64,000 nucleotides of DNA from Macrostomum lignano. Taxonomy: Eukaryota. Of the stretch, positions 9,742 through 59,800 are shown in pieces (within the stretch, counting starts at the first letter, position 1; every line of letters starts with the position of its first letter). The translations under genes and the position numbers were made by a program. The notes under the pieces are model-generated. The model saw only the letters and a list, made by a program, of their open reading frames with translations, did not search any database and had not been told where the DNA came from. The stretch spans positions 62,001 through 126,000 of the forward strand of contig NIVC01002896.1 in assembly GCA_002269645.1 (NCBI GenBank). Direction: 5' to 3'.

Positions 9742-11132
9742 ATGCCTCGCGGGCGTCGGCGAGCTCCGAGATGCCCTACTTGCCGAAAGGGCATCAAGGA
9801 CGGCGAGGACGGACTCGACTGCGACAGCTGCAGGAAATGATTTCACTGTGCCCGCAACATTGGTGCGATACTTTCAGCATTCTTTAAATTGGACTGTGGG
9901 GCGCTACCTCCAAACTTTCTGATCAGTGACGTCAGAGTGCAAGGCACCTCGCGGCGGCATCTGCTGTTTGCAAGTACAGCTATTGTGCTTCATGGTAATG
10001 TCCAGCCAGTCCAAGCAGGACTACGAGCTCGTACGTAGCAGTCTTCGGGCACCTGCGCCATTGCGACCACGTTGTCTTAGAGTCCGTCATGTTGGACTTT
10101 GAGGCCGCCGTCTGGCAGGCACTGCACGAATTGCTGCCGTCAATAGTGCCAAAAGACTGCCTTTTCCATTACTTGCAGGAAGAGCCAGCACTGGCAGCCT
10201 CGGCCAGCACTGGCAGCCTGTGCTACAAACACAATGCTGCTACGCGCCAGCTGCGCAGGCAATTGATGGCGGTGCCGTGTCTGCCTGCGTATGAGATAGT
10301 GGAGGCTTACACCAACGTGCGGCCAACCACAACAGCGACAAACGAAAACTACAAATTTACCACCCTGCTGCACACCTACGTCGCCCGCGTACGTCCATGG
10401 ATGTGCATGCAGCTGCGTCTGGTCGCTCGTCGAGCTCTCGGCCTTCAACCAGTTCGAGAGAACTAACAACGCCGTCGAAGGCTGGCCATTTGGGCTTTGC
10501 TAAACGCGCAAGTATCTGCAACCTGAACCGCGCCTCGCGGAACTGCTTTCTGCTTTCGACAGCGGGCCAGCAGGCAGCCGTCGTGGGGATTTCTCTCGCA
10601 CACAGCAGTGAGAAATCCGCGGCAACTCTTTGAGGTGCAGCAGCGTGACCAGGACCTGCGTACAGCCTCACAGGCCTACTCCATCGTAGGGTTCCAGCCC
10701 TTGCAGCTCCTCAACGCCTGCGCAGCGGTATAGTGGGCGCCAAACGTCGATCCATTTGAGGCGGTTTAAGCTTTATGGCTGTGACTTCCCTCTTTTTATT
10801 TTGGACATGTCATGTGAAGGCATTTTAACTGCATTTTTATCTTATACGAGCGCATTACTTTCCCTTTGTGACTGTTAATGTGGGCTGTATTCTTAAATAG
10901 GAATTTTATAGCTATTCACTTATTACTTTTTAAAACCAACCAACCATGGCTCAAGACACTATAGGCTGTGCTTTAAATTTTGTGCTTTTGTAACTTTATC
11001 TGTACTTCTCTATCGAAATATCAAACAAACATATGCTTCAAACAAAATTATCATGACACTTGTTAACATTAAACATAATTCTGGCTTGAAACAAATGCCC
11101 GGTTGACAAAATGCCAGTTTGACGAAATGTCC
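9742..11132 (+). mobile_element. Degenerate Mutator-like (MULE) transposon with N-terminal PHD finger
   Basis: ATG 9742 begins MPRGRRRAPR-CPTC-...-CDSC-RK*FHC (PHD pattern, W replaced by TGA). MULE core ...VMSSQSKQDYELV, MLDFEAAVWQAL...DCLFHYLQ (CxxH motif), RKLMAVP-like and RTNNxxEGWH-like segments lie in broken frames. Subterminal gacaaaatg/gacgaaatg repeats occur at ~11090-11132. Confidence 0.75.
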
Positions 11133-11642: not shown

Positions 11643-12636
11643 GTTTAACTGGATCATATACGCGAGGAAGAGTTTGAAAATTACTCTCTCAAAGGCATAG
11701 CAGTATAGTTTCTGCCAAGGAAATTTGTTGAAGCCAAAAAATATGAAAATTATAGATTCCAGACGTAAATCTTGAGTTTTTTATACTAACTACTATTTTT
11801 TTAAAAACTTAAATCTGATCCGTTAGTGTGTGCAGGTGTGCCCCCCCCCCTGGTACGCATTTGTTTCCCGATCGATATTCAGATTGATATTCGAAAACTA
11901 ACAAAATCTCTGCTCTGCAAAAATATTTTAGAACGCTGTTTGACAGGAAAAAGTGCAACTTAGAACATTGCAAAAATAAAGTTTCAGCTCGATCCGTCCC
12001 TCTGACTCTAAATGGCACCGATTTTCGATGTGCTCCCATTTAAAATACATGTGATTTTATAAGGCAGATCGATATTCGAGTTCGCTCACTTTGGCTCGAC
12101 CATTCAACATGAAATTTTACACACTAAAAAGTGCAAACCAGAAACCGATAAATATACAGTTTCAGATCGATCCGTCACTCTGGCTCGAAATGGCACCGAT
12201 TTTCGATGTGCTCCCATTTAAAATACATGTGATTTTATAAGGCAGATCGATATTCGAGTTCGCTCACTTTGGCTTGACCATTCAACATGAAATTTTATCT
12301 GTTCGAGCTGCCAAAACTTATTTTCGATCTGAACGAACGAAGCAACTGCAAATTACGTAGTGAATTTAAACAGCGCTTTTTTAATTTTACGAGAACATCT
12401 AGGATCTAGACTGTTTCTTAAAGCATACTAGGTAATCGTATATTAGGAATTACGAATCGTGCATCTCATCGGTCGTGCAATCGCACAGTTTTTTTGTTAT
12501 AATTTTCCTTTACAAACTCTCATACTCCATCAGCCAGGTGCGGATCCAGGAATTTCTTGAGTGGGGCCTAATGCAATGCTAGATAACCGAGGGCCTTGGG
12601 GCCGGATTGGAAGGGCCGGATCTGGCCCTGGGGCCG

Positions 12637-14174
12637 GGAACCAGTTAATTCGGCGACAGGTTGACTTGGCGACAGTCAGTTCGGCGACATGAGGGGCCAT
12701 TGCGTTGAGTTTGAGTTTGCATGTTTACTCGGATTTCAAAATCAACATCGGATCGTATGTACATTACATGCACAATGAACTGTGTTCCACTCAAAAGCTC
12801 ATTCACAACCGCTATCAAATAAAGCTATCAAATCACACGACTGCTGTACAAAGTATAATGAAAAAAGGGAACACAAAGTTAAGTTAGCTTTTAAAATATA
12901 CAAAGCGAAGATCGAAAGTAAAAATGAGCTGCTTGCTGCTGTCCGCAGTCTTGTGCCACATGCACAACCTACAGCTGCTGTCATGGATTTCGAGGCTGCA
13001 GCTTGGCGAGCTGTCAGACAGCAGTTTCCAGATGCTCAACTTAGAGACTGTGTTTTTCACTATACGCAGGTGTGTAAGAGAATGAAATAGAACTTTGAAT
13101 GGGACCTTTAACAGATACTGTTAAACAGATTACTGTTACAGACCCTACTGTACTATAAGTTTTGCTTGCTTAAATTTACTTGTGTCATCAAACACATGCG
13201 TTTTACAGGCAATCTATCGCCACATTCAAAGCTCTGGACTGCAAAATTTGTACGTATCTGACTTTGAAGTACAGTCTGTGTGCCGAAAATTAATGTCGCT
13301 GCCGTTTCTTTCACATGAAGAAATTAGTCAGCAGTTTTTTCGGCTACGAACTGTAGTTCAGCTGGAGCCTCTACAACTTTTGTGCGACTATGTGCAGGCT
13401 ACATGGCTGCGAAGCACAATCTGGAGCATCCGGGAACTCAGTGTTTTCAAGAAGGACGTGCGCACAAATAATGACACCGAAGGGTGGCACAGGAAGCTGA
13501 ATGCCAGAGCACAGCGCGGTCGACTTCAATTTTACCTGCTGGTGCGGCTGTTGCACGAAGAGGCCCAGATAGTCTCGATCAGCGAAGGCGACGAAGACCA
13601 AATTATCGTCGAATGGAACAACAGTACCAGCGCTTCTGGGGCGAATACACGTCAGGAGCGCGGACCGCCGAAGGCTTGCTAGACGCGTGCAGCTTGCTGA
13701 ATGGCCCAAACTGATTAAGTTTTATATTGTTGTACGGCCTACTCCACCTAGTTTAAACTTTTTAAACAATTTTAAAAACTTTTTAGCTTTGAAACTTTTA
13801 AACGTTTTAGACTAACTTTTACACTCGCACAATCCATTAATTTGCTTGATCGTCAACATAAAATGAGTTGTACATGCAATGACAAATAAAATCGTAAATT
13901 AAATATGATGTGCATGCATACTTCTCTAATAAATAATTAATGCGTCAAAATGCGACTCGTAGACTGGGCGTACATTTAACCTCTTTGAAAACGTGTTATT
14001 TGGCATGGTTAAAACAAACCTTTATTTAAATGGCAAGGATGAATAGCAATATGTTAAATTTCGTTTTCTAGTTTCGTAGCTTTCGTAGCATTCGCCGAAT
14101 TGGCTGTCACCGAACTGACTTGTCGCCGAATTGGTTGTCGCCAAATTAGCTTGTCGCCGAATTAACTGGAAGCC
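12637..14174 (+). mobile_element. Mutator-like element, internally deleted, transposase pseudogene with one intron
   Basis: Perfect 9-bp TSD CTGGGGCCG (12628-12636 and 14175-14183). TIRs GG(A/CT)(A/T)CCAGTTAATTCGGCGACA with subterminal ttcggcgaca repeats. MDFEAAAW...DCVFHYTQ splices over a GT-AG intron (13070-13208) in frame to AIYRHIQ...RTNNDTEGWH. Frameshift near 13575; N-terminus missing. Confidence 0.92.
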
Positions 14175-14639
14175 CTGGGGCCGAGGGCTGTTGACCCCCT
14201 GCTATAAGTCTTAATTTATAAGTAAGTTAATTCTCATATAGCTCCAAGTCCCAAACAACGTTGTTGCCTTCATGCGTAAAATTTATGAGAAAGAAATAAC
14301 GTTTCCTGTCAGAATAGAACAAAACTTCTGGAAGGAACGTTTTCAACCTCGTTCTGACCCCCAGATTTGTGGTTTTTTTTCTGTTTTTGGTGATTTATGG
14401 CCGTCTAGCTGTCACTTTTGGCTCCAGCCTGTCTGGGTCAAAGAGGTCTTTCCAGCTTTCTCCCCACTCACTCTGTTGCTTTCTCCTTGGATTTATGGGC
14501 GTTTTGCTGTCACTTTTGGCGCCAGGATGTCTAGACAAGTGACTTTTATTATGTTTTGCTTATGATTTATGACCGCACCTGTCAACTTCCCTGGGGTCTG
14601 AAGGCCACCTGGTGGGGTGGGTTTTGGGGTCTTGAGCTC

Positions 14640-15117
14640 AGCCAATCAGAGTCGACCTAACTGCCCCTGGCTCGACCAATCAGAAAATTCGGCGCCTATT
14701 TTAACAAAAGCTCTCAGCCAATCGGAAAATTCGGCGTGCGTTATAACAAATCGGCCGCATGAGAGCTATAAAAGGCGGCAACTCGACCCGCGCTCGAGTA
14801 ACCCGCCTCCTCCGGGACCTTCCCTGCCCTGCTGCTTCCTCTTCTGGTCCTGCCGACCTGATCCCCCTTTCCCCGGCAGTTTCGGCTTCAACAGCTAAGT
14901 TCCCCCTAAGAAGCATCATCAATATCTCCCGGCAGTGATCTAAGAGCAGCAACGACTATCGGCAAGCGAAGAGCAGCGGCGGCAATTCGTCAGTCAAGAT
15001 CAGCAACAGCATCCCATCTGAGCGCTTCAGTCTCTGTGGATTCCTTGGCTACCGGCCGATAGGTCCTCTGATTGGTTTGGTTTTAGACAGCTAAAAGACA
15101 CTAGATGGCAGGTAAGT
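14640..15117 (+). promoter_or_regulatory. Pol II promoter-like module: three CCAAT boxes, TATA, putative non-coding first exon and splice donor
   Basis: CCAAT at ~14643, ~14676 and ~14718; TATAAAA at 14767-14773; CAG|GTAAGT donor at 15112. It lies within a ~1.02-kb TGTCAG...CTGACA-bounded segment (14307-15326). Confidence 0.55.
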
Positions 15118-15990
15118 GCAGTGCCCCTCTAGTCGGAAGTCCGATTCCGATAGCTCCGGTTTGGTGAGCCAGGGCGCACGGACTGGTGGCAGCGAGTTAG
15201 TTAATCCGCGGGTTAGCTAATTTCTACCTTTCAAATTCTCCCTGCTTGTCTCTCGCTGTCTTCGCCTAGCTATAGGACCTTGCTGCTCGCCCACAATCTA
15301 GCTACCATGGGGCTGACCATCTGACAGGAGTGAGAGGCCAGAGTTCTAAGTGATTTATTTCTGAGTTCTGAGGCCCGAAGCTACAGGCTTAAAAAGGCCG
15401 AACCCACCAGGAGCACATCGAAAATCGGTGCCATTTCGAGTTAGAGGGACGGATCGATCTGAAACTGTATATTTATTGGTTTCTGGTTTGCACTTTTTAG
15501 TGTGTAAAATTTCATGTTGAATGGTCGAGCCAAAGTGAGCGAACTCGAATATCGATCTGCCTTATAAAATCACATGTAGCTATTTTAAATGGGAGCACAT
15601 CGAAAATCGGTGCCATTTAGAGTCAGAGGGACGGATCGAGCTGAAACTTTATTTTTGCAATGTTCTAAGTTGCACTTTTTTCCTGTCAAACGGCGTTCTA
15701 AAATATTTTTGCAGAGCAGAGATTTTGTTAATTTTCGAATATCAATCTGAATATCGATCGGGAAACAAATGCGTGCCCCCGGTCGGTGTGCATACGGCAT
15801 ATTAGATCTTGGATCAGAAAAGAAGAGATGCGACGGTCGACGGAGACTGGTAGGCCTATACTATGTTTATAACCAGATAAGTCTAGACCACTCATATATT
15901 TGTTATATAAGACGTGTATTAACTGAAACATCTAAAATAGGCCTATCAACTGCCAACTGGACTAATCTCAAAATCCAACTACTGTGGTCT

Positions 15991-16495
15991 GTGTGTAATA
16001 TATGCTAGAAAATTCTGGCATACAAATGACCTTTTTCAAAGTTGGCATAGGCTACAAATTTTGGCATACAAATTCATGCAATTTTTTGGTGTACCAGTAT
16101 TGGTGATACTGATGTCGTGCATGAAAATTGTAAAGTAACAACTTTTTTATGTGAAATAATAGAAAATTTATATAGTCTAGAAAGTCAGTGATAAACTTTT
16201 TTCATCTTTAAAATTAACAATAAATAAAATTAGTATAAATAATTGCTGAGAACATAAATTTTGCATTATTATTTATGTAGGTTTGATTTAAGTTTGTTTA
16301 AAATGAAAATATTTGTAATATTTTAAAAAGACTTTTCATACAAAAGCCTTTCTTAGGAAACTCTACTTGTGAAAACTGAATGAAATTTTTAGGCAGAATT
16401 TTTGGCATACATTTTAGGGAAATTTTTTGCTTTTGGTATATATTGGTATACATTTAGCAAAGATAGGATTCTTGTTCTGGCATATATTACTACAC
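15991..16495. mobile_element. Decayed MITE at the left edge of the CpG-void block
   Basis: TIRs gtgt(a)gtaatatatgc(t/c)agaa at 15991 and, reverse complemented, ending 16495. Multiple subterminal ttggcatac repeats. Confidence 0.6.
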
Positions 16496-18532
16496 AATCT
16501 GGACCCTAGAGGCCTACTTTTTATTTTAGATTACTATTTTCTTAGTTGGCTAGACAACTAGTGGCTCAAGTTGCCTGAGACATCACCTATGTACACAATA
16601 AGCTTCCAATATAGCAATGCCTCAGGGTAGTTAGGTCGTAGGTCAAATTGGTAACAAGACATTTTAGTAATAATAACTTTGGTAACAACTTGGGACATTT
16701 TGATTATACCAATGGTCAATTTAGTAACAAACTTTTTAGGTATGCAGTCATTTTGTCTGCTGCCTTTTTATCTGCTCGCAGACAAAATGATTATTAAAAA
16801 GAAAAAGTAAAGTATAGATATATAGGCCTAACTTGTCAAGCTATTTTTTGACAAAATTTTATGACAATAGTAGCCAGACAGGTAGTTTGCAGTTAAATAT
16901 GATCATGATTGGCTGGCTATTATGAGCATTGTTATGATCCTTGGCCCCACCCCCATCTAATGATAATAATGCATTTGCTATCCTATTGCAAAGTTTATTC
17001 ATAATGAACAAAAAGTTAGTATATAGGTCGAGTCAAGTCGATGTTTGGTGGTCTCTTGGGTAATATTTTTAGATAAATTTGTATTTTTAAAAATGATTTT
17101 GTTATCTTAGCTTTAGGTATTTTAAGATATACAGTATATATAATCCTTTTAATTGGTAGACAAAATAACTGCATTGCATTTTTGCAGACAAAAGAGTAGT
17201 AGACAAACTGGCAGCAGATAAAACGACCATCAACCACTTTTTATACTTGATTTTACTATTTTCCATTGTTAAATATTGATATATAGCTGTTGATAAACTT
17301 TTATTAAAGTTATAAAGGTCTGTATGATAGGCCTATCAATTATCACTTTTTAATACATTCTGAAACAAAACACTACAGTGCACACTTGCATTATAAGCAC
17401 AAGCATTAGCTATGGGTGCACATTGCATGGCAGTGGTTCTTTTTTCCTGGTTGGAAGTCTTCACTGGCTTTGCAATTTAAGGTCACAGCATAGTATATGT
17501 AGATTATGCTGAGTGCATCTGTAATATTCATGATCATCATACCTATAGTAAAAACCATAGCTATATGAGTATCCTTTTGAATAAACAAAAATGACTGAAC
17601 CTCCAATTGCTTCCATTTTGAAGTACCTCAAATGTCTCTAGACAATTGTGATCAGTGATTGGTTAAACATCTAGGTCTTCAATCTATAAATCAGCAATAG
17701 TAGCAACTTGAATTTTGGCATTGCTCTTTACCTCATCACTTGCTACTACCAGCAGCAGCAACTTTAAATTTAGCATCACTTTCTATATGTACCTCCTGAG
17801 TAATGCAGATCATATAGCACTAAGAAAAATAACTCTTCATCATTTTTTTATACAATGCAGCAGAAATGAATAATGCTCCTAAAAAAACAAAAACAATTTA
17901 GCAATTTACCCTTTTTCCACATACCCTTTCTCCCCTCTTCTTTCTTTCCCTTCTGTCTTCCCCCCTATCTTTTCTATTCCCTCTTCATTCTCTCCTCTAC
18001 CTTCTTCCTTTCTACCCTCTTTTTCCCTCTTCCATTCTAAGAGTGAATACATGCTAATTTGATAGAATGCAGAATATAAAGCATAAACTTACTACTCAAA
18101 CACAGTTGATGGAACCAATGTTTGCAATGTCATAACTTAGTGCAGGTTGCTCATTAGTTACTGCTCTGACATATGCTAGATAGACATCTTCAACTTCCAT
18201 TAGACAATTAGTTAATGAGCTGGTATACTTTAGCTAGCTAGTTGCTTTTTAGATGCAAAGAAGATAAAGTTGATATTCTTGATAGTTAAAGAGTAAATAT
18301 ATTGGTATATGGTCTTGTGTTCAATTGCTTCTATACAAATATAGATATAGGATATACACGCAATATATAATACATATAATGTGATGGCCATCTTAACCAA
18401 TATGATATATCACAGAAGTTCAATTGCATAGAAAGAAATAAAGTAAGCAATTTTGATAGACCACATCCATTCAGATTACCTAGAATAACTTACTTCTATG
18501 ATTCATAGGTTTAGCAGGCTGCAACAAGTAAT

Positions 18533-18928
18533 TGTAATGCAATGATCAAGTGCCAACAATAGCATAGCAATTTTCTTACATAGTATAATTATCATTTTCA
18601 CTTAATTGTGTTACTAAATGAACTAATAGGTGTTATTTATTTACTAAATATAGAAGACCAAGTTTGTATGACTTATATTCATATGTTTGATACAATTTGA
18701 TACAATATGATATAACATAGATATATTATAGATACAGATACTATGTTATATCATATTGTATCAAATTGTATCAAACATATGAATATAAGTCATACAAACT
18801 TGGTCTTCTATATTTAGTAAATAAATAACACTTATTAGTTCATTTAGTAACACAATTAAGTGAAAGTGATAATTATACTATGTAAGAAAATTGCTATGCT
18901 ATTGTTGGCACTTGATCATTGCATTACA
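18533..18928. repeat. Near-perfect inverted repeat (188-bp arms, 20-nt spacer)
   Basis: 18533-18720 is the reverse complement of 18741-18928 with two transition mismatches seen. Spacer atatattatagatacagata. Confidence 0.95.
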
Positions 18929-19329
18929 TATTTCACATAGTCACAAGCTATGACCATAAGTTTACTTGCTTCAATATCAATGTTAAATGCTTCAATGTCA
19001 ATAGAAACTGTATGCCAACAATTTATCTTGCTCAATTAACTAACTTAACCATAATCTATATTCTATAAGGTGCATAGTGGTGGACTTTTATAGAAAAAGT
19101 GTGGATGTAGTCTTATATAAAAGAAAAATATTATTTTGACAAATATGTCAAAACCAACTTTCAAGGAGTTGCACTCATTTAATTATCACTTGAATGCAAT
19201 CCTCTATTATAAGGTTAAAATTTCCAAGGGGTCTTTAGCTCGTATAAGAGATATGCTTCCCAAGTCAGACAATACTTCTTGTCCATCTTGTCTAGCAGTT
19301 AGAGCCAGCTAGCTCAAATATATAGCACC

Positions 19330-19715
19330 AACCATTATCCTGCTTATTGATATTTTGTTATATATAGTAGGCCTTCTTTATTAGTAGATAGTCAATGTTT
19401 GAAGGCAGCAGCTTCTGAGCTCCATTGTTGTGCCATTGATGCTAGTCATAGAAGTAGTCCTTGTCATCTAAAATAATGTTTTTAGTTGATCAAGTTAATA
19501 ACTGGTAATATATTGTGGGTAACTAAATAATGTATAGTTCACTTACAGTTCTCTTTGTCAATAGCAAACAAGAAAACATCTTTACAATTTGGTCTAACAG
19601 GAGGCTTGTCAATACAGACAGATTTGTCTAATTTACATAAAATATCATATGCCTCAACTGGAATCAGTATATAGTGACCTTTAGAAGTATAATAGTCATT
19701 GACACTGAGAATGAA
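19330..19715 (-). pseudogene. Relic spliced coding sequence with a CG-1 (CAMTA-type)-like DNA-binding motif, probably transposon-derived
   Basis: Manual translation: KGHYILIPVEAYDILCKLDKSVCIDKPPVRPNCKDVFLFAIDKEN | GT-AG intron 19546-19468 | YDKDYFYD*HQWHNNGAQKLLPSNIDYLLIKKAYYI*. PPxRPxxxxVFLF...DxxxDxHxW resembles CG-1 domains from memory; unverified. Confidence 0.4.
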
Positions 19716-20389
19716 ATTTTAACTCCTAGCATTCTTACAATTCATTTCAAGTCAAAAGAGCTACTTGACTTTTGCAAAAAAGCCTGTTTTTCAAATATTT
19801 AATCCATTTAGCATCAAGCAATTTCTTAGCCAAGATACATGTACTGGCACAGGAAAATTTCTAATTGAACATTACAAGTTCAAAGAAAATTGGTTGAGCT
19901 GTTTTTTCTAATTGATCACATAGTCATCTAAAATTCTAAACAAACTTTTAGCACTTGTAACTTTTGAACCATAACAGAACAGTTTTTGCGCTTCTATGTG
20001 TTTAGTTATTTTAGAATTCATAAGCAGCTATGTGAAAAATATAAAACTAGAAGTTTGACACTTCTGGTTACATAATTCTAGTTAAATAATACATAATTAA
20101 GCTAAGGGGGCTAAATAGGAACATTATATCATGAGCAAGGTATATTATTATGAGCAAAACATTATAATGAGCATGGGTGACTAAATATAATGAGCATAAT
20201 ATAATGAACAAGACATTATACTACAAAAGTAGCATGTAAACAATAGAATGTAATATTATAAGCAATGGCATGTGAGCATAATAAAATAAGCAATAACATA
20301 AAAATATTTTGCAACTTTATTTTACTCAAAATGTCAGTTCAATTGAAATTAGTTTATGCTAAACTCCATTGACTGGCTATCTTGTACTG

Positions 20390-20950
20390 GTCAATTGACT
20401 TCTATTACAGTCTAGCACATTTCATGTTGCAGCTGAAGCTGCCAGTAAGCCTAGCTGGACTGCATGATCAATTGCAGTGCATATATTACCACTTGCTTTT
20501 AGGTGACTATGCATTGTTCATGTGAAAATGAGGCTCTTAGCTCTTGGAACACCATCTTTGGTTCACTCATCTAGGGTAAAAACCCTTTGCCATCTAATCG
20601 TAGTAGTGCAATTCACATAAAATAGATCTTCAGCTGGCCAATCAGTTGTTTGTAGCTTTCATGTTGCAAGCCTAGGATCTCTGCTAGAATGGCCTAATAG
20701 TTTTCCCCAAATGCCATCTTATTTTGTTGGGCTGGTCACTGGTTCCTATGCACCCCTAGTGACCAGTGTGCTTTTCTGCTTGCCTTTTCAATATTGCCAG
20801 GCAAGTGTTGGAATTGTGTGGCACCAGAGTCATCTTTATGACAAACAATTTCAGAGCTGGCCACTTACTCTCTTGAATGTTTACCACCCCTCTTGGCTAT
20901 TGGGTGTCCATCACCTCTTTTGAGGTATGTACCACCTCTTCTTTTGTTCT
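20390..20950 (-). pseudogene. Relic open reading frame interrupted by isolated stops
   Basis: About 185 codons of protein-like translation (…HLPGNIEKASRKAHWSLG…AILAEILGLQHESYKQLIGQLKIYFM…) with only scattered single TAG/TGA/TAA stops. Family unidentified. Confidence 0.3.
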
Positions 20951-23900
20951 AGAAAGATGAATATAGCATTGGCAGTACCATTTTAAGCAATTGTCATATT
21001 TCACTTGCAATTTACATATAGTAACTGATAATATTTCAATTAATAACAAAAAATAGAAACATAATAGTAGTTAAGATGTGATGAGATGGCTAAAACATGT
21101 GTTTTCCAATGTAATGTCACACAAGTTGAATTGAGCATCTAGCATTCAAAACCAGGCTTATGCATTGTTCCTATTAACAGATAGGACTTTAAGACTTATC
21201 ATAGCAAGGGTGGATTCCTTGTTTAGTATAGGCTGTTTAACTTGTATTGATGCAGGTAAAGCCACAAATGATGAAACATGTTGTTTGTCGCAGTTGGTCA
21301 AGTCAATTGTTTGGTAGTCATTTAGATGCCTCATAGGACCAGTTGTAGCAATTTAATTAAATGAGTGAGGCAGAAGGGTGGTTCTAATTCGTGTTTGTTT
21401 TGTTTTGTTATCAAGAAGTCAGAAAAAGAGGTGCTTATCAGCTAGGTTTGCCTGGTGGATATTTATATATATATATAGAGAGAAAATAATGTTGTTCTAG
21501 AAATATGTTTGGGATTATAATAAAGATACAATATTATACTTGTAACATGTTTTGTAACTATAATGAGCAAACACATTTAATAATAATATGGCTAATAATT
21601 AAACTATAAAGTAAATAAAGTTAAAGCATAGAAATAGTTTGTTATGGAAATTTCTAGAGAAATGTAGAAACTTCTTTGACTTAATTTGGAAATTTTACTT
21701 TAGAATATATGAAAGGAAAGGAAACTTATAGAAGTTAGGGACATTGGAATAATGCTAACTAGCAAGATGCTACAGTTGACTGCAACTTACCCAGTCAATA
21801 TTTTTGCTAGTGGAAAGGACATCTATTTCTTCTTCTACAATGCCAACATAAATGTTATTTATTTATTAGTGTTTTAAATATTAACTTTTGTCAAAGTTTA
21901 AATATCTTTTCATTATTTATCATAGTGGCCAAGTTGAAGCAAAGATTCATCTTCAGTGGGACCTAGAAAGCAAAAAGGTAAATTATGACTCCACAATTTT
22001 TTCTATCCTATTGAAGTGCATGCTTTACTTTGATGATTCTAAACTTGTCCCAATAGTAAATATGCCTAATGGAGCTGATTAAAAAATAGAAAATAGTACT
22101 TATATAAAACTAATTCATGATTAAATATACAATTAATCAGTCACATATTAGCTGCAAACAAAACAATAATATTAATTAGGTATAAAAATGTTTTTGAGCA
22201 CTTAGGTAACATTTGCTTTATGTTTAAACAAAAAGAGATATCTAGATCTTGCCACCTTAATGACATATGGGTAGTTAGGTTCAGAATTGAAATAGTATGC
22301 TATTTAAGTAATACAAATACAAAACAAAATTTGCAGTAATACAAAATTACTGCAAAAATACCTGATAGTTTAGATACTAATTTGGACTTCATTTTCTTGT
22401 TGCCATTGAGTAATTGATCAACTATGTAATGCATCAAACAAACAACTATCATGCTGATCTTTAGCTGTAGCAATTAATGGCTTTACAACCTGAGAGATGT
22501 CATGTGTTAATAAAACTTTCTCTTAAAACTAGTAAATGTATAACAATATAACAATATAATAATTTACTATAACAACTAAAGACAAGCATAACTTTTGGCA
22601 ATACTTATGCAGCTGCCCTAAGTAGAAGTGAGTTGCAATCATAGTGCTAAATAGGAAATTGATCATATTTCTCCTCTGTTGAACTATTGAAGTATTCAAT
22701 ATTGATATTTGATGACAACAAGGTTTAGATAATTTTACATGCTTTGATCACTCCAATCTCTATGCATCTACCTTTCTTCTATTTCTTCATTATTGCTAAT
22801 GATCATCATTGCCTTTATCATGTTCTATACCATGACCATTTGCCTCTATTTACTTACTGTATAGATACTTAGTTGTCACATTGCCACTTAATGGCTATTC
22901 TCATATTATCAGTGGTACCCTTGTCATGGCTGGCTTTAGTGAAGCCCCTTTGCTAGCAATAGATACCAATTTGCCATAGACTTGCTTAAGAACTTTATGT
23001 AAGGCTAATAAAAATTGTCTAAAATAGGTTATATATATATAGCAATTGGTATTGCTCTTTGCTATAGCTTAATAAAAGAAAAGCAAATGACATGTCTTAC
23101 TAGTCTATATGCTATAGGTGACACTAATACCCTAGTGACTTGTCACCTGTTTGCAATCCAAAGTAGGTTGGTTATATCTCATTTGTACTTTTTCCATATA
23201 CCTTGCTAAAGTCAATAAGTACCACTAGGGGATACATACTTAGCCAAAATTTATCATGCAAAATTTGCATTCCATAAAGCAGATAATTGCTTCTGCCATT
23301 GATTTTTTGGGTTTATGATGGCAACTTGCAAAAAAGTTAGGTAGGGGTGATCAGTTTGTCATCTAGTTGGCTTCAAGTATTTTAAATGTTTGCTTGGCAT
23401 GTCCAATAGGTTGTATATTTGAGTGCAGTGCAAAGCTCCTTGTGGCACAAGCTTTGCTTGGATATGTATTGCTTTTTCAGTTTGGTTGTTTGAAGTGATA
23501 TGACAATATTTTTACTTTGTTATCAAATTAGCTTGTAATTCCCTATTCATGTTTTACAACATAAGATATAAGGTATTTTTATAACAAAACCAAAACTGTT
23601 AAAAGTGCTACACATTTCTAGACTAAGTTTAGGTTACAAATGTTTTTGAAAATAAAGCTACTATTGATTTTTCCATTGACAGGATTTTTGAAATGTAAGA
23701 CAAATATATATAACATGATATTTATGAGTGAAAAATAGAAGAAAGTTAAGAAAAGCACAATTGATTTAAGCTTGTATATTGATATATTATAGTATTCTGT
23801 TTCACACCTTTGCCATACATTTCTGTTACAATTTTTTAAAATAGAACTTGCAATATCCATCTTGCTCTAGCACAAATCAACACAAACAACATCTAGTTAG

Positions 23901-24164
23901 AAAAGCAAAAAATCTGATGAGATTTTTACATGTGCCCTCTTGTAAGTTAAAGGCCACATGTAATTGCTATAGACTAAGACTGAATGGTCACTTCTGTGCA
24001 TTTCTTTAGTGGAAGATCATCTAGCATGGATGAAGAAATAACCCTGATCACAATAATGTACACAATAAGAAGGAAAAAGATGCTCTCAATCAGCCCTAAT
24101 ATGTCTATGGCTAAACTTTTCATTTAATTGCACAAAAAGATTTTCAGCCTTGGAACACAAGATT

Positions 24165-24918
24165 TAAGTGTCCATTGCTGGGGGTGGCATTTAAGGGTCC
24201 ATGGCTGAGGGTGGCATTTAAGGGTCCATTGCTGAGGTCGGCATTTAAGAATCCATGGCTGATAGTGGCATTTAAAAATCCATGGCTGAGGGTGGCATTT
24301 AAGGATCCATGCCTGAGGGTGGCATTTAAGGATCCATGGCTGAGAGGGGGTGTTAGGGTCCATTGCACTGAGGGTGGCATTTAAGGATCCATGGCTGAGG
24401 GTGGCATTTAAGGATCCAAGGCTGAGAGGGGGTGTTAGGGTCCATTGCACTGAGGGTGGCATTTAAGGAGCCATGGCTGAGGGTGGCATTTAAGGATCCA
24501 TGGCTGAGGGTGGCATTTAAGGATCCATGGCTAAGGGTGGCATTAAAGGATCCATGGCTGAGGGTGGCATTTAAGGATCCATGGCTGAGGGTGGCATTTA
24601 AGGATCCATGGCTAAGGGTGGCATTAAAGGATCCATGGCTGAGGGTGGCATTTAAGGATCCATGGCTGAGGGTGGCATTAAAGGATCCATGGCTGAGGGT
24701 GGCATTTAAGGATCCATGGCTGAGGGTGGCATTTAAGGATCCATGGCTGAGGGTGGCATTTAAGGATCCATGCCTGAGGGTGGCATTTAAGGATCCATGG
24801 CTGAGGGTGGCATTTAAGGATCCATGCCTGAGGGTGGCATTTAAGGATCCATGCCTGAGGGTGGCATTTAAGGATCCATGGCTGAGGGTGGCATTTAAGG
24901 ATCCATGCCTGAGGGTGG
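24165..24918. repeat. 27-bp minisatellite GAGGGTGGCATTTAAGGATCCATGGCT
   Basis: Tandem periodicity of 27 bp. It produces the spurious RVAFKDPWL ORF extension. Confidence 0.97.
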
Positions 24919-25043
24919 AATCACACTGCCATTTAGCATCCTCAGTCCGAATTCGAAATGCCGAAATTGAAGTTGATTTTTCACTGACACGCGCTATGAC
25001 AAAATTAAAATCTATATCAATGCACGCGCCAAAGCTTGCAGCA

Positions 25044-25481
25044 ATGAGGCTGATCACTCCCGAGATCTCCTGGCACGAGACTACGCCAATTTATTCGTGC
25101 GACATTCAGCAGACATTGAACACGGATTCTAACGGCGCCAACGGCTGGTACCGCCTAGCAACAGGCGGTAGGGACAATCGAGTCCAGCTGTGGAAGCTGC
25201 CCGCCGCGGGCGACGCCGTCGTAGAGTTTTTATCGTCGCTGCGTCGACACGAAAAGCCGGTCAATGTGGTCCGATTCTCGCCAGACCAGCGCCTGTTGGC
25301 CAGCGGCTCTGACGATGCCACCGTGCTGTTGTGGGCCCGGCAGGAGGTCCAGCCTGAGCTCCCCGCTCCCTCGGCAGCGGACGAGGATGACCTCGTGTGC
25401 AAGGAGACTTGGACTGTTTGGCGGGCGCTGCGAGCTCACTTGGAGGATGTGTACGATCTGGGATGGATGCCAGACTCCATG
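25044..25481 (+). CDS. CHAF1B: Chromatin assembly factor 1 subunit B (p60/Cac2), exon 1
   Basis: MRLITPEISWHETTPIYSCD matches the characteristic CHAF1B N-terminus (MKxxTxEIxWH). WD40 repeats LATGGRDNRVQLW, VNVVRFSP, LASGSDD, LEDVYDLGW. Donor GTGAGT at 25482, phase 0. Confidence 0.93.
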
Positions 25482-25501
25482 GTGAGTTTGGCTTAACTCA
25501 T

Positions 25502-25720
25502 TGATCCATGAGATTTTGAGTACTCATCCTCAAATTTGATCCATGAGATTTTGAGTACTCATCCTCAAATTTGATCCATGGGATTTCGAGTACTCATCCT
25601 CATATTTGATCTGTTAGATTTTGAGTACTCATCCTCATATTTGATATGTGAGATTTTGAGTACTCATCCTCATATTTGATCTATTAGATTCTGAGTACTC
25701 ATCCTCAAATTTGATCCGTG
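25502..25720. repeat. 35-bp intronic minisatellite (~6 copies)
   Basis: Unit GATCCATGAGATTTTGAGTACTCATCCTCAAATTT with variants, in CHAF1B intron 1. Confidence 0.9.
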
Positions 25721-25827
25721 AGATTTAGAAGCCCCAACCCTCTATTCAATAGAATCTCACGCATTGGCTACCAGTCAAGCGAATAGATTATCAGTGATAA
25801 ATGAGTGAACCTTAACACCCCCCGCAG

Positions 25828-26370
25828 GGCCTCGTGTCCGGCTCAGTTGACCGGTCCATTGTCCGCTGGAACCTGGCCAAAGAGCAGCAGCGCACAATTG
25901 TACGCGAGCACGCCCACTTTGTCCAGGGCATCGCCTGCGATCCCCTCGGACGATTGGTGGCCACCCAGAGCTCGGATCGGACCGTGCGAGTCTACGGTTG
26001 CAGCGCCAGGGCCGTTGTGATAGCCAAGTGCGTCAGGAACACTGAGCAGCAGCAGCAGCAGCAGCAGCAATCCAACAATTATCGCCTATTCGCAGACGAC
26101 AGCTGGAAATCATTCTTTCGCAGGCTGTCATTCTCGCCAGACGGAAAAGTCCTGGCAGCCCCGGCCGGCCTGCATTGGAATGATAATTATTGCGTTCACC
26201 TGTTCGGCAGGGCCAAGCTGGACAAGCCGTTCGCGTCCCTGGTTACCGGCCAGTCCGCGCCCGTTGCTGTGCGTTTCTGTCAGCGCCGATTTGCGCTGGC
26301 TTATCATCCGCAACTGGAGCTGGGCAGGCGCAGGATTCAGCAGGATCTGGTTAAGCTGCCGTATAGATGG
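25828..26370 (+). CDS. CHAF1B: CHAF1B exon 2
   Basis: Acceptor ccgcag at 25827. GLVSGSVDRS, HAHFVQGIACDP, ATQSSDRTVR, LFADDSWKSFFRRLSFSPDG...APAG, LPYRW. Donor GTAAGG at 26371. Confidence 0.93.
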
Positions 26371-26589
26371 GTAAGGCTTTGGTGCGCTTTTATGAGGGCT
26401 GAGGTAGCTATGATTGATCAGCTGACACTTCACAAATCCTTTGCTAATGCTGGGATTTAAGTACTTTGGTGAGGGCGAGATATGAGGATTTAGTTAGTGA
26501 AGGATTTCGTTAGGGAAGGATTTAGATAGTGAAAAATTTAGTTTGTTAAAGATTCAGTTAGTGAAGGATTTAGTTAGTGAAGCATTTAG

Positions 26590-27205
26590 TTAGTGAGAGT
26601 GAGATTTAAGGATTTAGTTAGTGATGGTGAGATTTAAGGATTTGGTTAGTGAGAGTGAGATTTAAGGATTTAGTTAGTGAATGAGAGATTTAAGGATTTA
26701 GTTAGTGATGGTGAGATTTAAGGATTTAGTTAGTGATGGTGAGATTTAAGGATTTAGTTAGTGATGGTGAGATTTAAGGATTTGGTTAGTGATGGTGAGA
26801 TTTAAGGATTTGGTTAGTGATGGTGAGATTTAAGGATTTAGTTAGTGAATGAGAGATTTAAGGATTTAGTTAGTGATGGTGAGATTTAAGGATTTGGTTA
26901 GTGATGGTGAGATTTAAGGATTTGGTTAGTGATAGTGAGATTTAAGGATTTAGTTAGTGAATGAGAGATTTAAGGATTTAGTTAGTGAGGGTAGGATTTA
27001 AGGATTTAGTTAGTAAGGGTGAGATTTAAGGAATTGTTAGTGAGGGTGAGATTTAGGGATTTAGTTAGTGAGGGTGAGATTTAAGGATTTGGTTAGTGAG
27101 GGTGAGATTTAAGGATTTAGTTAGTGAGGGTGAGATTTAAGGATTTAGTTAGTGAGGGTGAGATTTAAGGATTTGGTTAGTGAGGGTGAGATTTAAGGAT
27201 TTAGA
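26590..27205. repeat. 28-bp intronic minisatellite GATTTAGTTAGTGATGGTGAGATTTAAG
   Basis: Tandem periodicity in CHAF1B intron 2, with a degenerate left edge from ~26490. Confidence 0.93.
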
Positions 27206-27314
27206 TAGTTGAGTATGAGCTTCGAGAACTCGCTAGCTATCGTGGGTGAGATCTAAGCATCTCGTAGTCAAGATTCCACTCTAAGCGGGAGCTTCATCCC
27301 AACCCAACGGGCAG

Positions 27315-32632: not shown

Positions 32633-32829
32633 TTTGGACAATCATTCTACAAGCATATTGGGAGGGTTTGACATCCTAAGCGATTAATTCTCTTTGAGCG
32701 ATAGGAAAGAGATCTGAAACTTTGATAATTCTTCTATTTGAAGCATAATCCTTGATCTTTCCTTTGCTATTTGCTCATCCATCAGAGCTTGTAAATTGAC
32801 CAATAATCAGAACCAGAGATGTAACTCAC

Positions 32830-37823: not shown

Positions 37824-38614
<791 letters not shown>

Positions 38615-46520: not shown

Positions 46521-46601
46521 CTCTACGACTAAATTCGTGATAGTTTCGCACCGTTTCAATTAGCTAAATTAAAGGAAATGAAACCTTGAATTTCCTCGCA
46601 G

Positions 46602-56816: not shown

Positions 56817-59800
56817 TTTTATCTTGTTGTCCTTTTTAGTTTATAATATTCACTGATTATTTAATTCGCTGAAAAGGTTGTTCACTCAATTTGTACTAAA
56901 GCTGCATTTTATAAAAAATAATAACAAATTGATAATTCATTAATCAAAAAATATTCTAAAATATTTTAGTTTATTTCAAATTAAATGGCAATTCCAATTC
57001 AAGCAGTTAAATTTAGATGTAACATTTCATTTTAAATTGTAAAAATTAATGCTGCCAAAATTGAAAAAAGTTAATTTTTTGTACTTTGTCAAATGCTATA
57101 GGCTATGATTATAAAATTCTGAAAGTGCTGACTGCAATAAAATGTGCCAGCAGACAAATGAATACTTTTTAAGCGACACAATTATTGCATTTCTATACCT
57201 ATTTATTATTACAGTATAAATTTAGGATAAAATAAAAAACTTTGCTTCTTTAACAATCACACCAGTTACTTTTGGGGTTGCAAATTAATGATAACTTCAA
57301 ATAAACTAGGCCTATTTAACACAGAAACTACAGTTTAAACAAACAAAAAACCTGCCTATCCATTATTCTGAAATTATTTTTTTTTGATCTCCAGCATTTT
57401 TTCGATAGATTATTTATAGACTTACAAGATTCAGTAGTGCAAAGACTAAAGAGTGAGCTTGAGATTCCTTTAGGAAGACAGGGATGAAGAGAATAGAGTC
57501 GAAGTTAATTAGTATCACTTAATTGCTAAATTAATTAAAATGTTAAGTCACTTCCGTATACTAAGTTCTACCTTCGATCTCCGTTTCGTATAAGTTTAAA
57601 TTTTTATCTTTGGATTTTTCCTTGGACTCAGTGAAGTGAGAACGGTTTCACCCAAATTTAAAATAGCTAAATTATTAACCGTGGTTCGAAACTTCGAATA
57701 AAAGCTTTCAAATTCATATTTTAGTAAAGCTAAAGAGTAAAGATTCTTTGAATGACTTCACATAGAGTTGCACAGATTTTTTAAAAAGTTGTGATCTTTA
57801 CTTTGTTATTATTCAACTAAAAATAACGACAAAAGTATAATTCCACACAACGTTTGGCTCTTTTGTATTTTACAATTTCTTTAAAAAAACTAAAATAAGT
57901 GAAATTTTCTATTATAGTACATAATTTTTTGTAATGAAATGATGTAACTGAAATTGTGCTCTTAAATTTTCGCATAAAGTCGAACTACACTGCAGAAATT
58001 CACTAAGTGATGCATTTTTTACATGGCGTTTATTATTTAATCCTGTCCTTCTGATCGTTTTTGAGATTTTCTTGAGAAAAAAACAGAGCAATATAGAGAG
58101 ATTTAGATATTCGTGACTTGTCAAGAAAATTTGTAATTGATTAATCTTTTAGCTACTGTTATATCTCTTAACATATATGCATGTACATTCGATGTATGCA
58201 CTAAAAATAATCCAACGAAAATCCGGATTTAATCTGGCACTGCATCTGTCAGCTAGTAGCTTTGATTACAAGACTTGAAGACTCTCAACCTCGCAGGCTC
58301 AAGGCCTAGCGATCGGCTACAGCTGTAGCTACGGTGTGCATGTACATGTACATGTACGTGCGTTGGACATGCAGACCAGATAGTCCGTCCCCGTTGCATT
58401 TATTTCTCAAATATCCTTTTGAATAGCTTTAAGACAGGCCAAACACTGCAGTTCTTACCCGAACTCCGGTAGGCAGGCGCAATCTTTCTCCTGTTCTCCG
58501 CCTCGTTGAAGACCGGTGCAGGTTATTCTTGCTGTCATTTTCAGTGTTCCAAAATATCATTTTAGAACGATGGAGCTATAGTGTCTCAAACCTTGAAACC
58601 TTTCTCGCTTTGGCAATTAGCATGAACTTCTACTATCTCTACCTCTTTATGCTTACGCACTTATATTTAGACTTTTGCCATGGACATTCGTGTCTAAATA
58701 TCGCTGTCATTCCCCCCGGCAATACATGTAGCATGACGTAGCATGTAAAACGATTCTCCTGAATTGCTGAGCCAGCAGAATGCATGCAGCGACTCAGGCA
58801 AACACGAAATTCAAGAAAAGACGGGCCAAGCTAACTTATATTGTTGTGTTCCTTCTCAAGCACCCCTCCAGTCGACCTTCAAGATATTCAACGATTCCGC
58901 CAGAATATCTTTTACAAGCTAGTGAATTTAGTACCACTCTGTGCGCCTCAGTACAGCCCTGCTAAGCCTTCAAATTTCATCCGCACATCGACCGCATGCA
59001 CTTCGGTGGTCACTGGCCTTCCAACTATATGCCGCGGAGCTTCTGGACCTTCAACAGAAGCCACCTGGTCCTGGCCCTCAACGTCAACGCAGCCAACGTG
59101 AGACCGAGCTGCAACTAAAAGCTGCTGAATTCTGATTCACTCTTGTCTCATCAGGTCGGTCGTCAGAAGTGAAATCATTTCGATTTCGGGTTTGCCATGG
59201 CGTGACCGTGGCTGATTAAATTTCAGATCAATTTTTCATTATCGGCGACAATCTATTCTTCATGTGGCCGCATGCTGAGAGACATGCAATTTGTAGCTGC
59301 AAGAAAACCGAGTCGCATGTATTCATTAAAATTGTGATAAACGCAAGCAACTCTAACAAATCTGAGATTTCTCAGAGACCATCAGTCTTAAAACAATTAA
59401 ATTCTAGGCAACAGTTTTGAGAATGCCTATGAGACTCGGCACAATATCCTTCATTTTCTACTGCGTGTAGAAATGAAATTTGCGAGTTGATACCGGTAGC
59501 ACAGAGAATCAACGATCATTTTCCTACTCTAAGTAGTGCTTACGCAAGTTCTTCATCTAAAAGCATGCCGAGGTTATAACAAAGCAGCAGAGGTTGGATA
59601 TTCCTAAGGGCTGATCTCAGATGAATTTTTGCGAAGACCAGACAATTAAGGTTCCTATCTAGTCGAAAAACTTTTATTAGAAATAAGCTTTTGAAATAAA
59701 TATTCAACTGTCCATTGAAAGCGATCCTGACACGTCCAGATGCAATGGTGTAACTTCGAGTGGTCGTTGTTAGTCCATGAAGCGGCAAAAAGGAACTGAT

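What the first reader, a model, noticed from the sequence alone, without database searches (positions are those of the whole stretch)
15950..24150. Sharply bounded 8-kb CpG-void island: footprint of localized methylation-deamination or hypermutation
Seen: about 12 CpG by eye in ~8.2 kb (none from ~21.4 to 24.15 kb), where roughly 200 would be expected even at ~32% GC. CpG is frequent immediately left (15780-15845) and right (24945 onward) and in other AT-rich stretches (57.4-58.2 kb), so AT-richness alone does not explain it. The neighbouring LINE and MULE relics (1.6-14 kb) are broken by frameshifts yet remain CpG-rich, so ordinary TE ageing does not explain it either. Established: 5mC deamination converts CpG to TpG/CpA. 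Inference: this block was singled out for dense, heritable methylation or an active C-to-T mutator, i.e. a regional genome-defence system that permanently erases a TE nest, in a lineage where global methylation is thought to be low.
Basis: partly seen in the sequence, partly recalled or inferred. Interest (0 to 1): 0.85.

Follow-up and report, generated by a model that had tools for sequence, protein, structure and literature searches.

The report
CpG-void AT-rich island, flatworm genome
An 8.3-kb stretch of non-coding DNA just upstream of the CAF-1 p60 gene of the flatworm Macrostomum lignano has lost about 94% of its CpG sites and a third of its G/C bases while its neighbours have not; this is most likely the fossil footprint of a locally methylated domain, in an animal whose methylation map has not been described.

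Summary
Window 15846-24130 (8,285 bp, GC 31.4%) holds 13 CpG where 204 are expected (o/e 0.064, Poisson p ~3e-63). The flanks have o/e ~0.9-1.1. Every other long CpG-free run in the window is a minisatellite.

The window is Macrostomum lignano, contig NIVC01002896.1:62001-126000. The block is unique and non-coding. It has no TE hallmarks, and it ends 97 bp before the CAF1B start codon if the CpG-free minisatellite is counted.

A two-parameter model reproduces its whole dinucleotide signature. I took the host's own unique DNA and applied symmetric C>T/G>A changes, about 6x faster at CpG, until GC reached 31%. Leech or fluke DNA treated the same way does not fit.

Ordinary M. lignano DNA (window versus a 1.3%-diverged paralogous contig) shows only 1.6x CpG mutability. 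Age alone therefore fails, and the regime is local.

M. lignano retains DNMT1 and DNMT3 and has low 5mC, according to the literature.

Best reading (about 0.5): a long-standing, locally germline-methylated domain that decayed in place. "TE nest" and "genome defence" are unsupported. Foreign DNA, RIP-like hypermutation and misassembly remain rivals. The paralogous locus and methylome data would decide.

The parts
15846..24130 (.). CpG-void, AT-rich block of unique non-coding DNA (8,285 bp, GC 31.4%, CpG o/e 0.064, GpC o/e 1.53, no strand skew)
   Evidence: No ORF longer than 80 aa and no stop-free stretch longer than 100 aa. No Pfam or Rfam match. No homology to the rest of the window or to the paralogous locus.
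15846..17340 (.). Left sub-block. It holds 7 of the 13 residual CpG (o/e 0.21) and 5 of the 6 AGGCCT sites, 4 of them as TAGGCCTA. ATAGGCCTATCAA occurs twice (15936 and 17326).
17880..18050 (+). Polypyrimidine (C/T) tract. It may be a decayed C/T-rich minisatellite of the kind common elsewhere in the window, but this is not shown.
18533..18928 (.). Near-perfect palindrome with 188-nt arms (99% complementary) and a 20-nt loop. It is AT-rich and CpG-free, and the arm mismatches I read off are transitions.
20043..20300 (.). Decayed tandem repeat of about 14 nt (ATAATGAGCA-like units). It is the only satellite-like feature in the block.
24162..24918 (.). 27-nt minisatellite (28 copies, unit ATTTAAGGATCCATGGCTGAGGGTGGC, GC 52%, no CpG in the unit). 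It extends the CpG-free state to 24947. Its units show no gradient of GC>AT changes towards the block.
24948..25481 (+). CpG-dense 5' region and exon 1 of the CAF-1 subunit B (p60) gene. The ATG is at 25044 and a GTGAGT donor follows 25481. This marks the right-hand return to normal CpG.
15778..15845 (.). 68-bp spacer, GC-rich by eye, with 8 CpG, lying between the MULE terminal repeat and the block. It defines the base-pair-sharp left edge.
11852..15777 (.). MULE-like element. It has 368-bp terminal inverted repeats (11852-12214 and 15410-15777, 96.7% identical) around a MULE transposase relic. It is CpG-normal, and only 1 of its 7 TIR substitutions is at a CpG.
56868..57402 (.). Second, small CpG-void AT-rich patch with the same character (GC 0.25, 1 CpG against 8.3 expected, TpG/CpA o/e 1.3-1.4, GpC o/e 2.4, one TAGGCCTA). 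It abuts AT-rich DNA with normal CpG.

Best explanation
The block is M. lignano's own non-coding DNA that has sat for a long time in a locally, heritably (germline) CpG-methylated and probably heterochromatic state.

Spontaneous deamination of 5-methylcytosine removed about 94% of its CpG, turning them into TpG and CpA. Ordinary AT-biased C>T/G>A change lowered its GC from about 48% to 31%. The flanking DNA kept its CpG because it is unmethylated and is either young (a MULE, minisatellites) or constrained (the CAF1B promoter and gene).

The sharp edges would then be junctions with younger inserted or expanded sequence and with a protected promoter, not the limits of an enzyme's reach.

Shown here: the CpG void, the matching TpG/CpA surplus, the fit of a decay model started from host DNA, and the local nature of the CpG-specific regime.

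Inferred: that methylation was the cause, that the decay happened in place, and that it was slow rather than a burst.
For: 1. CpG o/e is 0.064 (p ~3e-63). The TpG+CpA surplus of 265 compares with a CpG deficit of 191, and it is strand-symmetric (583 TpG, 574 CpA; GC skew 0.00).

2. A decay model started from host DNA fits the block. I applied symmetric C>T/G>A changes to the host's unique DNA, about 6x faster at CpG, until GC reached 31.4%. This gives CpG o/e 0.01-0.08. The dinucleotide distance to the block (CpG excluded) is then 30-78. Decayed host segments differ from each other by 31-77. Before decay the distance was 122-151. Leech and fluke DNA treated the same way stay at 113-131. The block also shares the host's unusually high GpC o/e (1.53, against 1.24-1.45 in the host and 0.9-1.2 in the other animals). 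Its GC heterogeneity over 500-bp windows matches decayed host DNA.

3. The regime is local. Across 10,973 unique aligned columns between the window and the paralogous contig, CpG-site transitions run at only 1.6x the rate of non-CpG G/C transitions. At 1.6x, decay to 31% GC would leave CpG o/e at 0.64. The MULE 68 bp away has 1 of 7 TIR substitutions at a CpG.

4. A second small patch with the same signature (56868-57402) lies next to AT-rich DNA with normal CpG. The state therefore recurs and is separable from AT-richness.

5. Literature states that M. lignano retains DNMT1 and DNMT3 and has low-level 5mC (PMC11292947, PMC9246332, PMC10658182).

6. Both flanks are bona fide M. lignano sequence on one 131-kb contig.
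Against: - There is no direct methylation data.
- No ancestral or paralogous copy of the block was reachable, so the substitution spectrum is modelled, not measured.
- The non-CpG change needed (about 0.165 per site) is more than 12 times the paralog divergence (1.28%). The block must therefore be very old, yet it is not interrupted by the minisatellites that occur every 2-3 kb elsewhere (a rough Poisson estimate of mine gives about 0.03 for none in 8.3 kb).
- The left edge is sharp to the base, which is also what an insertion junction would look like.
- Invertebrate methylation usually marks gene bodies. Here the adjacent housekeeping gene is CpG-normal.
- The host-decay fit was contrasted with only two other animals.
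Confidence: 0.5

Rival explanations
1. Foreign or relocated DNA. The block was inserted, by horizontal transfer or from a distant compartment of the genome, already carrying an AT-rich, CpG-poor composition acquired elsewhere.
For: The left edge is sharp to the base. The raw dinucleotide signature is far from every host segment even without CpG (122-151 against 42-104). There is no homology to 85 kb of host sequence. There are no minisatellites in a genome full of them.
Against: The whole signature can be reached from host DNA with a two-parameter decay, but not from the two other animals tested. The block shares the host-like GpC excess. It has no coding capacity, no terminal repeats and no target-site duplication. 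A second small patch has the same signature. Exact-match scans of metagenome and viral collections and a search of 1.84 billion representative proteins gave nothing meaningful.
Confidence: 0.15
2. Active, RIP-like hypermutation. An enzyme-driven burst of C>T changes (a DNMT-like or deaminase activity), aimed at this segment, converted it quickly rather than over a long time.
For: A transitions-only model fits at least as well as one with 30% transversions (distance 42 against 62 at 6x, and 53 against 54 at 10x). The amount of change is more than 12 times the paralog divergence while the neighbours are untouched. The edges are sharp. From my own knowledge, the 31% versus 48% GC contrast resembles the AT-blocks of RIP-affected fungi.
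Against: No duplicate of the block was seen, so there is nothing to trigger a repeat-directed process. The classical RIP index (CpA+TpG)/(ApC+GpT) is 1.40, where RIP gives values below 1.03 (the threshold is from my own knowledge). No TE remnant is present. The young 188-nt inverted duplication inside the block is almost unmutated. To my knowledge no such system is known in any animal. There is no strand asymmetry of the APOBEC kind.
Confidence: 0.1
3. Assembly chimera or contaminant. The 8 kb was joined into the contig by misassembly of long reads.
For: The right junction lies at a minisatellite, which is a classic place for misjoins. The composition changes abruptly.
Against: This would need two chimeric junctions inside a 131-kb contig with host sequence on both sides. 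The block has no ORFs, so it is not bacterial, plastid or gene-dense diatom DNA. From my own knowledge of vertebrate values, its signature (GpC 1.53, TpA 0.94) is not vertebrate-like. It shares the host-like GpC excess. A second patch has the same character.
Confidence: 0.05
4. Nothing special: simply the oldest neutral DNA in the window, evolving under the same mutational regime as the rest of the genome.
For: The flanks are young repeats or constrained genes. AT-biased decay alone explains the GC drop.
Against: With the genome-typical CpG mutability of 1.6x, decay to 31% GC leaves CpG o/e at 0.64, and with no preference at all 0.94. The observed value is 0.064. AT-rich DNA at 57403-58200 keeps normal CpG.
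Confidence: 0.05

Closest known systems
Mosaic DNA methylation footprints in invertebrate genomes (bimodal CpG o/e; for example the CpG-based survey of gene-body and repeat methylation in Cnidaria, PMC8857923, and the classical Ciona work, which I cite from my own knowledge)
   Same: A delimited domain with a CpG deficit and a TpG/CpA surplus next to CpG-normal DNA, in an animal with DNMT1 and DNMT3. The inference runs from sequence to historical germline methylation.
   Different: The usual target is the bodies of transcribed genes, sometimes repeats. Here it is a non-coding, non-repeat intergenic block, and the adjacent housekeeping gene is CpG-normal. An o/e of 0.06 is far below the values I recall for methylated invertebrate compartments. 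The GC content has also fallen by 17 points.
Vertebrate- and sponge-type methylation with unmethylated CpG-rich promoters (Amphimedon, cited in PMC9246332)
   Same: CpG-void intergenic DNA runs to within about 100 bp of the start codon of a housekeeping gene whose 5' end is CpG-dense.
   Different: In those genomes the depletion is global. Here it is an island in an otherwise CpG-normal window (o/e 0.9-1.1).
Fungal repeat-induced point mutation and the AT-rich blocks it creates (Neurospora, Leptosphaeria; from my own knowledge)
   Same: Sharply bounded AT-rich blocks (about 31-34% GC) in a genome of about 50% GC, explicable by C>T/G>A transitions.
   Different: RIP needs duplicated sequence and prefers CpA, which depletes CpA/TpG. 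Here no duplicate was found, CpA/TpG are in surplus, and the preference is for CpG. RIP is not known in animals.
APOBEC-type editing of retroelements in vertebrates (from my own knowledge)
   Same: Clustered C>T/G>A change confined to one element.
   Different: That editing is strand-asymmetric and acts on retroelement copies. The block has no skew (GC skew 0.00, AT skew -0.02) and no retroelement features.

Membership tests
Historically methylated, CpG-depleted domain (5mC deamination footprint) | CpG o/e far below the flanks and below what base composition predicts | tested here: met
   13 observed against 203.8 expected, o/e 0.064, p 3e-63. The flanks are at 0.84-1.13.
Historically methylated, CpG-depleted domain (5mC deamination footprint) | A matching, strand-symmetric surplus of TpG and CpA | tested here: met
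   TpG is 583 against 455 expected and CpA is 574 against 437 expected. GC skew is 0.00.
Historically methylated, CpG-depleted domain (5mC deamination footprint) | CpG-specific mutability raised locally, relative to the rest of the genome | tested here: met
   About 6x is needed in the decay model. The window-versus-paralog comparison measures 1.6x. The estimate for the block is indirect and model-based.
Historically methylated, CpG-depleted domain (5mC deamination footprint) | The organism has maintenance and de novo CpG methyltransferases | not tested
   Taken from the literature only. DNMT1 and DNMT3 are retained and 5mC is low (PMC11292947, PMC9246332, PMC10658182). The primary paper (Wasik 2015) is not held.
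Historically methylated, CpG-depleted domain (5mC deamination footprint) | The residual CpG and the domain are methylated in the germline | not testable with these tools
   This needs bisulfite or nanopore data.
Historically methylated, CpG-depleted domain (5mC deamination footprint) | Substitutions relative to an ancestor or paralog are dominated by CpG>TpG/CpA | not testable with these tools
   The paralogous region could not be reached. No annotated gene lies near it.
RIP (repeat-induced point mutation) | The target is a duplicated sequence | tested here: not met
   No copy of the block was found in the window or in the paralogous locus, either directly or in a transition-collapsed alphabet. 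Only 85 kb of the genome could be searched.
RIP (repeat-induced point mutation) | RIP indices: TpA/ApT high and (CpA+TpG)/(ApC+GpT) low (below about 1.03) | tested here: not met
   TpA/ApT is 0.97, which is high. (CpA+TpG)/(ApC+GpT) is 1.40, which is the opposite of RIP.
RIP (repeat-induced point mutation) | Changes are exclusively C>T/G>A transitions | tested here: inconclusive
   The transitions-only model fits (distance 42-53), but a model with 30% transversions is not clearly worse (54-62).
Transposable element or TE nest | Remnants of TE proteins | tested here: not met
   The longest stop-free stretch is 100 aa. The ten longest stretches have no credible Pfam hit. The representative-protein search found only translations of tandem repeats.
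Transposable element or TE nest | Terminal repeats (LTR or TIR), target-site duplication, or multiple copies | tested here: not met
   No repeat links the two ends, and the only internal repeat is the 398-bp palindrome. Copy number across the genome could not be tested.
Horizontally acquired DNA or contaminant | A composition that cannot be derived from the host | tested here: not met
   Decayed host DNA is indistinguishable from the block (30-78 against a 31-77 baseline).
Horizontally acquired DNA or contaminant | An identifiable donor sequence | tested here: inconclusive
   Two 22-mers gave no exact match in the metagenome or viral collections. No eukaryotic genome collection was available to search.
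APOBEC-type editing | Strand-asymmetric G>A or C>T clusters | tested here: not met
   GC skew is 0.00 and AT skew is -0.02 over the block. The 2-kb windows lie between -0.04 and +0.09.

The most novel reading that the evidence does not exclude
M. lignano has a locus-directed C>T hypermutation process, functionally like fungal RIP but with a CpG preference and perhaps dependent on DNMT. It rapidly and permanently converts chosen segments into AT-rich, CpG-void DNA. The TAGGCCTA cluster at the left edge could mark or bound such domains. To my knowledge this would be the first such system in an animal.
Probability: 0.08. Interest if true: 0.9.

Novelty: new member of a known kind. Interest (0 to 1): 0.5.

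Why it matters
[quoted passage not shown] Other sources say M. lignano is a flatworm that kept DNMT1 and DNMT3 and has low 5mC.

If islands like this one are the methylated compartment, three things follow:
- Low global 5mC would be explained, because the targets have already lost their CpG.
- Methylation in this lineage would be aimed at particular non-genic domains rather than at gene bodies.
- A simple sequence scan (CpG o/e, GC, perhaps TAGGCCTA) would give a testable map of those domains in a tractable regeneration model.

If instead the block proves to be foreign or hypermutated, that would be more unusual still.

Tried and rejected
- **Reaching the paralogous copy of the block.** The Ras gene (39442-40392) located the source contig and a paralogous contig. 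The retrieved paralogous stretch, L001, covers only window ~31974-49142. Look-ups for P0001, for two ORFs inside the block, for the 441-aa ORF and for the SH3 ORF all found nothing on record. CAF1B does not appear to be annotated in the NCBI assembly.
- **Sampling more of the genome through a LINE RT query.** The M. lignano hits came from UniRef only, with no contigs.
- **Cryptic homology after collapsing transitions (purine/pyrimidine alphabet).** The only matches came from the polypyrimidine tract, and a reversed control gave the same lengths.
- **Hidden minisatellites preserved in purine/pyrimidine space.** Only a weak repeat of about 14 nt was found.
- **Purine/pyrimidine k-mer test of host-likeness.** The block falls within the host range, but so do leech and fluke DNA. 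The test does not discriminate and I discarded it.
- **A gradient of GC>AT changes in the minisatellite units nearest the block.** There is none.
- **Whether the MULE split a formerly larger block.** It did not. The DNA to the left of the MULE has normal CpG.
- **GC homogeneity as a sign of equilibrium or foreign origin.** It cannot be distinguished from decayed host DNA.
- **Pfam, Rfam, metagenome and viral exact-match scans, and the representative-protein search.** Nothing meaningful was found.
- **Decay simulation started from L001.** It fitted poorly (133-143), but L001 was not masked for tandem repeats, so I do not count this result.
- **Sources rejected by my own reasoning.** Bacterial, plastid and diatom DNA would carry ORFs. 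Human or other vertebrate DNA does not match on GpC and TpA.
- **Primary paper.** Wasik et al. 2015 is not held.
Full report
**1. The observation.**
The void is real and is larger than chance by any measure.
- In 1-kb bins, 16001-24000 hold 0-3 CpG each (12 in total) at GC 0.29-0.36. The bins on either side hold 44-65.
- CpG is dense up to 15841. It then occurs only 13 times up to 21390 and once at 24239. It is dense again from 24948.
- For 15846-24130 (8,285 bp, GC 31.4%) there are 13 CpG against 203.8 expected (o/e 0.064, Poisson p ~3e-63).
- TpG (583 observed, 455 expected) and CpA (574 observed, 437 expected) are in surplus by 265 together. That is about the size of the CpG deficit, and it is equal on the two strands.
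- Every other CpG-free run longer than 700 bp in the window is a minisatellite whose unit lacks CpG.

**2. Where the window comes from.**
- The gene just right of the block is CAF-1 subunit B (Pfam PF24105, E 6e-45). Its best hit is a Macrostomum lignano protein that is 98% identical.
- A single-exon Ras-family gene (39442-40392) is encoded on two contigs of assembly GCA_002269645.1.
- One of them, NIVC01002896.1, is 100% identical to the window over 20,951 bp. The window is therefore NIVC01002896.1:62001-126000.
- The other, NIVC01000527.1, is a paralogous copy. It differs by 1.28% in unique sequence.
- The window is typical of this genome. It has 22 or so minisatellite arrays, an RT relic, and a MULE-like element with 368-bp terminal inverted repeats (11852-12214 and 15410-15777, 96.7% identical) around a MULE transposase relic.

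**3. Anatomy of the block.**
- It is unique, non-coding DNA. No ORF exceeds 80 aa and no stop-free stretch exceeds 100 aa.
- The ten longest stretches have no credible Pfam match. There is no Rfam family above noise.
- No direct or inverted repeat links the two ends.
- Nothing in the rest of the window or in the paralogous locus resembles it, even after collapsing transitions.
- Its internal features are:
  - a polypyrimidine tract (17880-18050);
  - a near-perfect 398-bp palindrome (18533-18928);
  - a decayed repeat of about 14 nt (20043-20300);
  - a cluster of the palindromic motif TAGGCCTA in the first 1.5 kb.
- The left edge (15845/15846) is sharp to the base. It lies 68 bp beyond the MULE's right terminal repeat.
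- On the right, the unique block runs into a 27-nt minisatellite with a CpG-free unit (24162-24918).
- CpG returns at 24948, which is 97 bp upstream of the CAF1B start codon at 25044.
- "TE nest" is therefore not supported by anything I could detect.

**4. CpG loss alone is not enough.**
- The block differs from every host segment even when CpG is ignored. The dinucleotide distance is 122-151, against 42-104 among host segments.
- Its GC content is 17 points lower than the host's.
- I took the host's own unique DNA and applied strand-symmetric C>T/G>A changes at one rate for all C/G, with a multiplier at CpG, until GC reached 31.4%.
- With a multiplier of about 6, CpG o/e comes out at 0.01-0.08. 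The remaining signature moves onto the block (AA/TT, AC/GT, AG/CT, CA/TG, CC/GG, GA/TC and TA all move the right way).
- The block differs from individually decayed host segments by 30-78. Decayed host segments differ from each other by 31-77.
- The same treatment of leech (Helobdella) or fluke (Paragonimus) DNA leaves distances of 113-131.
- The block also shares the host's unusually high GpC o/e (1.53, against 1.24-1.45 in the host and 0.9-1.2 in the other two animals).
- Its GC heterogeneity over 500-bp windows is what decayed host DNA would show.
- The model implies about 0.165 substitutions per site, which is about a third of all G/C sites.
- A foreign origin is therefore not needed. Only two other animals were tried, so it is not excluded.

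**5. Is the regime local?**
- Across 10,973 unique aligned columns between the window and its paralog, transitions at CpG sites (2.05%) are only 1.6 times as frequent as at other G/C sites (1.29%). The transition:transversion count is 81:59.
- At 1.6x, decay to 31% GC would leave CpG o/e at 0.64. With no preference it would be 0.94. About 6x is needed for 0.06.
- The MULE 68 bp from the block has 19 CpG in each terminal repeat, and only 1 of its 7 repeat substitutions is at a CpG.
- The minisatellite units nearest the block show no gradient of GC>AT change.
- "It is simply old" therefore fails. The block had a CpG-specific mutational regime that its neighbours did not have.
- A second, 535-bp patch (56868-57402) has the same character: GC 0.25, 1 CpG against 8.3 expected, TpG/CpA surplus, GpC o/e 2.4, and one TAGGCCTA. 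It abuts AT-rich DNA with normal CpG.
- That recurrence argues for a state that is separable from AT-richness, and against a one-off artefact.

**6. Mechanism.**
- According to the literature, M. lignano retains DNMT1 and DNMT3 and has low-level 5mC. A 2022 review says methylation patterns are unknown in free-living flatworms (PMC11292947, PMC10658182, PMC9246332). The primary paper is not held.
- The best-supported reading is a long-standing, locally germline-methylated domain. Its CpG were lost by 5mC deamination while AT-biased change lowered its GC. Its sharp edges are junctions with younger or protected DNA (the MULE, the minisatellite, the CAF1B promoter).
- Weak points:
  - there is no methylation data;
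  - the spectrum is modelled rather than measured;
  - the implied age is more than 12 times the paralog divergence, in a block free of the insertions that pepper its surroundings;
  - the target is unusual for an invertebrate, being intergenic rather than a gene body.
- Rivals:
  - inserted foreign or relocated DNA (0.15);
  - a RIP-like burst (0.10), which shares the transition fit and sharp edges but lacks any duplicate, has the wrong CpA/TpG index (1.40), and has no animal precedent that I know of;
  - misassembly (0.05);
  - age alone (0.05).
- APOBEC-type editing is excluded by the absence of strand skew.

**7. Verdict.**
A local, CpG-directed C>T regime is supported. "TE nest" and "defence system" are not.
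- This is a new example of a known kind of feature, a methylation-decay footprint. It is unusually extreme, and it occurs in a lineage where the methylation map is missing.
- It is a worthwhile lead that rests on one locus and on indirect evidence.
- The paralogous locus and existing or new 5mC data would settle it.

Noticed in passing
window 15851, 15938, 16823, 17328 and 57307: The palindromic 8-mer TAGGCCTA occurs 5 times in the window, against 0.64 expected. All five copies lie in CpG-void AT-rich DNA: four in the first 1.5 kb of the block and one in the small patch 56868-57402. AGGCCT occurs 5 times in 15846-17400, against 0.10 expected. ATAGGCCTATCAA occurs twice (15936 and 17326). The flanks of the sites are not alike. 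I have no explanation. It could be a binding or boundary motif, or a relic of a short repeat.
   Followed up: partly
window 56868-57402: A second, small CpG-void AT-rich patch (GC 0.25, 1 CpG against 8.3 expected, p 0.004, GpC o/e 2.4). It lies directly next to AT-rich DNA with normal CpG (57403-58200).
   Followed up: partly
window 11852-15777: A MULE-like element with long terminal inverted repeats (368 bp, 96.7% identical) around a frameshifted MULE transposase relic (12782-13682; Pfam MULE E 1.4e-5, just under the curated cut-off). Part of the terminal repeat is also tandemly duplicated (178-nt unit at 11972-12297). A second MULE-like ORF lies at 10089-10466. No clear target-site duplication was seen.
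   Followed up: partly
window 18533-18928: A near-perfect 398-bp palindrome (188-nt arms, 20-nt loop) inside the block. The loop region gives weak miRNA-precursor-like Rfam hits well below threshold. It is young relative to the decay of the block.
   Followed up: partly
window 24162-27209: The CAF1B gene has a minisatellite directly upstream of its start (27-nt unit), one in intron 1 (35-nt unit, 25501-25726) and one in intron 2 (28-nt unit, 26580-27209). The 27-nt and 28-nt arrays are distantly alike (about 67-70% identical).
   Followed up: no
whole window; L001: The window is NIVC01002896.1:62001-126000 of M. lignano assembly GCA_002269645.1. A paralogous contig (NIVC01000527.1) is collinear over window ~32-49 kb. 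It differs by 1.28% in unique DNA and has large length differences at minisatellites. The NCBI annotation is sparse: CAF1B, a rhodopsin-type GPCR (41949-42833) and an 813-aa ORF (61558-63999, no homologue found) appear not to be annotated.
   Followed up: partly
window 15846-24130, residual CpG: Nine of the 13 surviving CpG are preceded by T (TCG). This is more than the 35% T content predicts. They may be newly created sites or may reflect context-dependent loss. The numbers are small.
   Followed up: no
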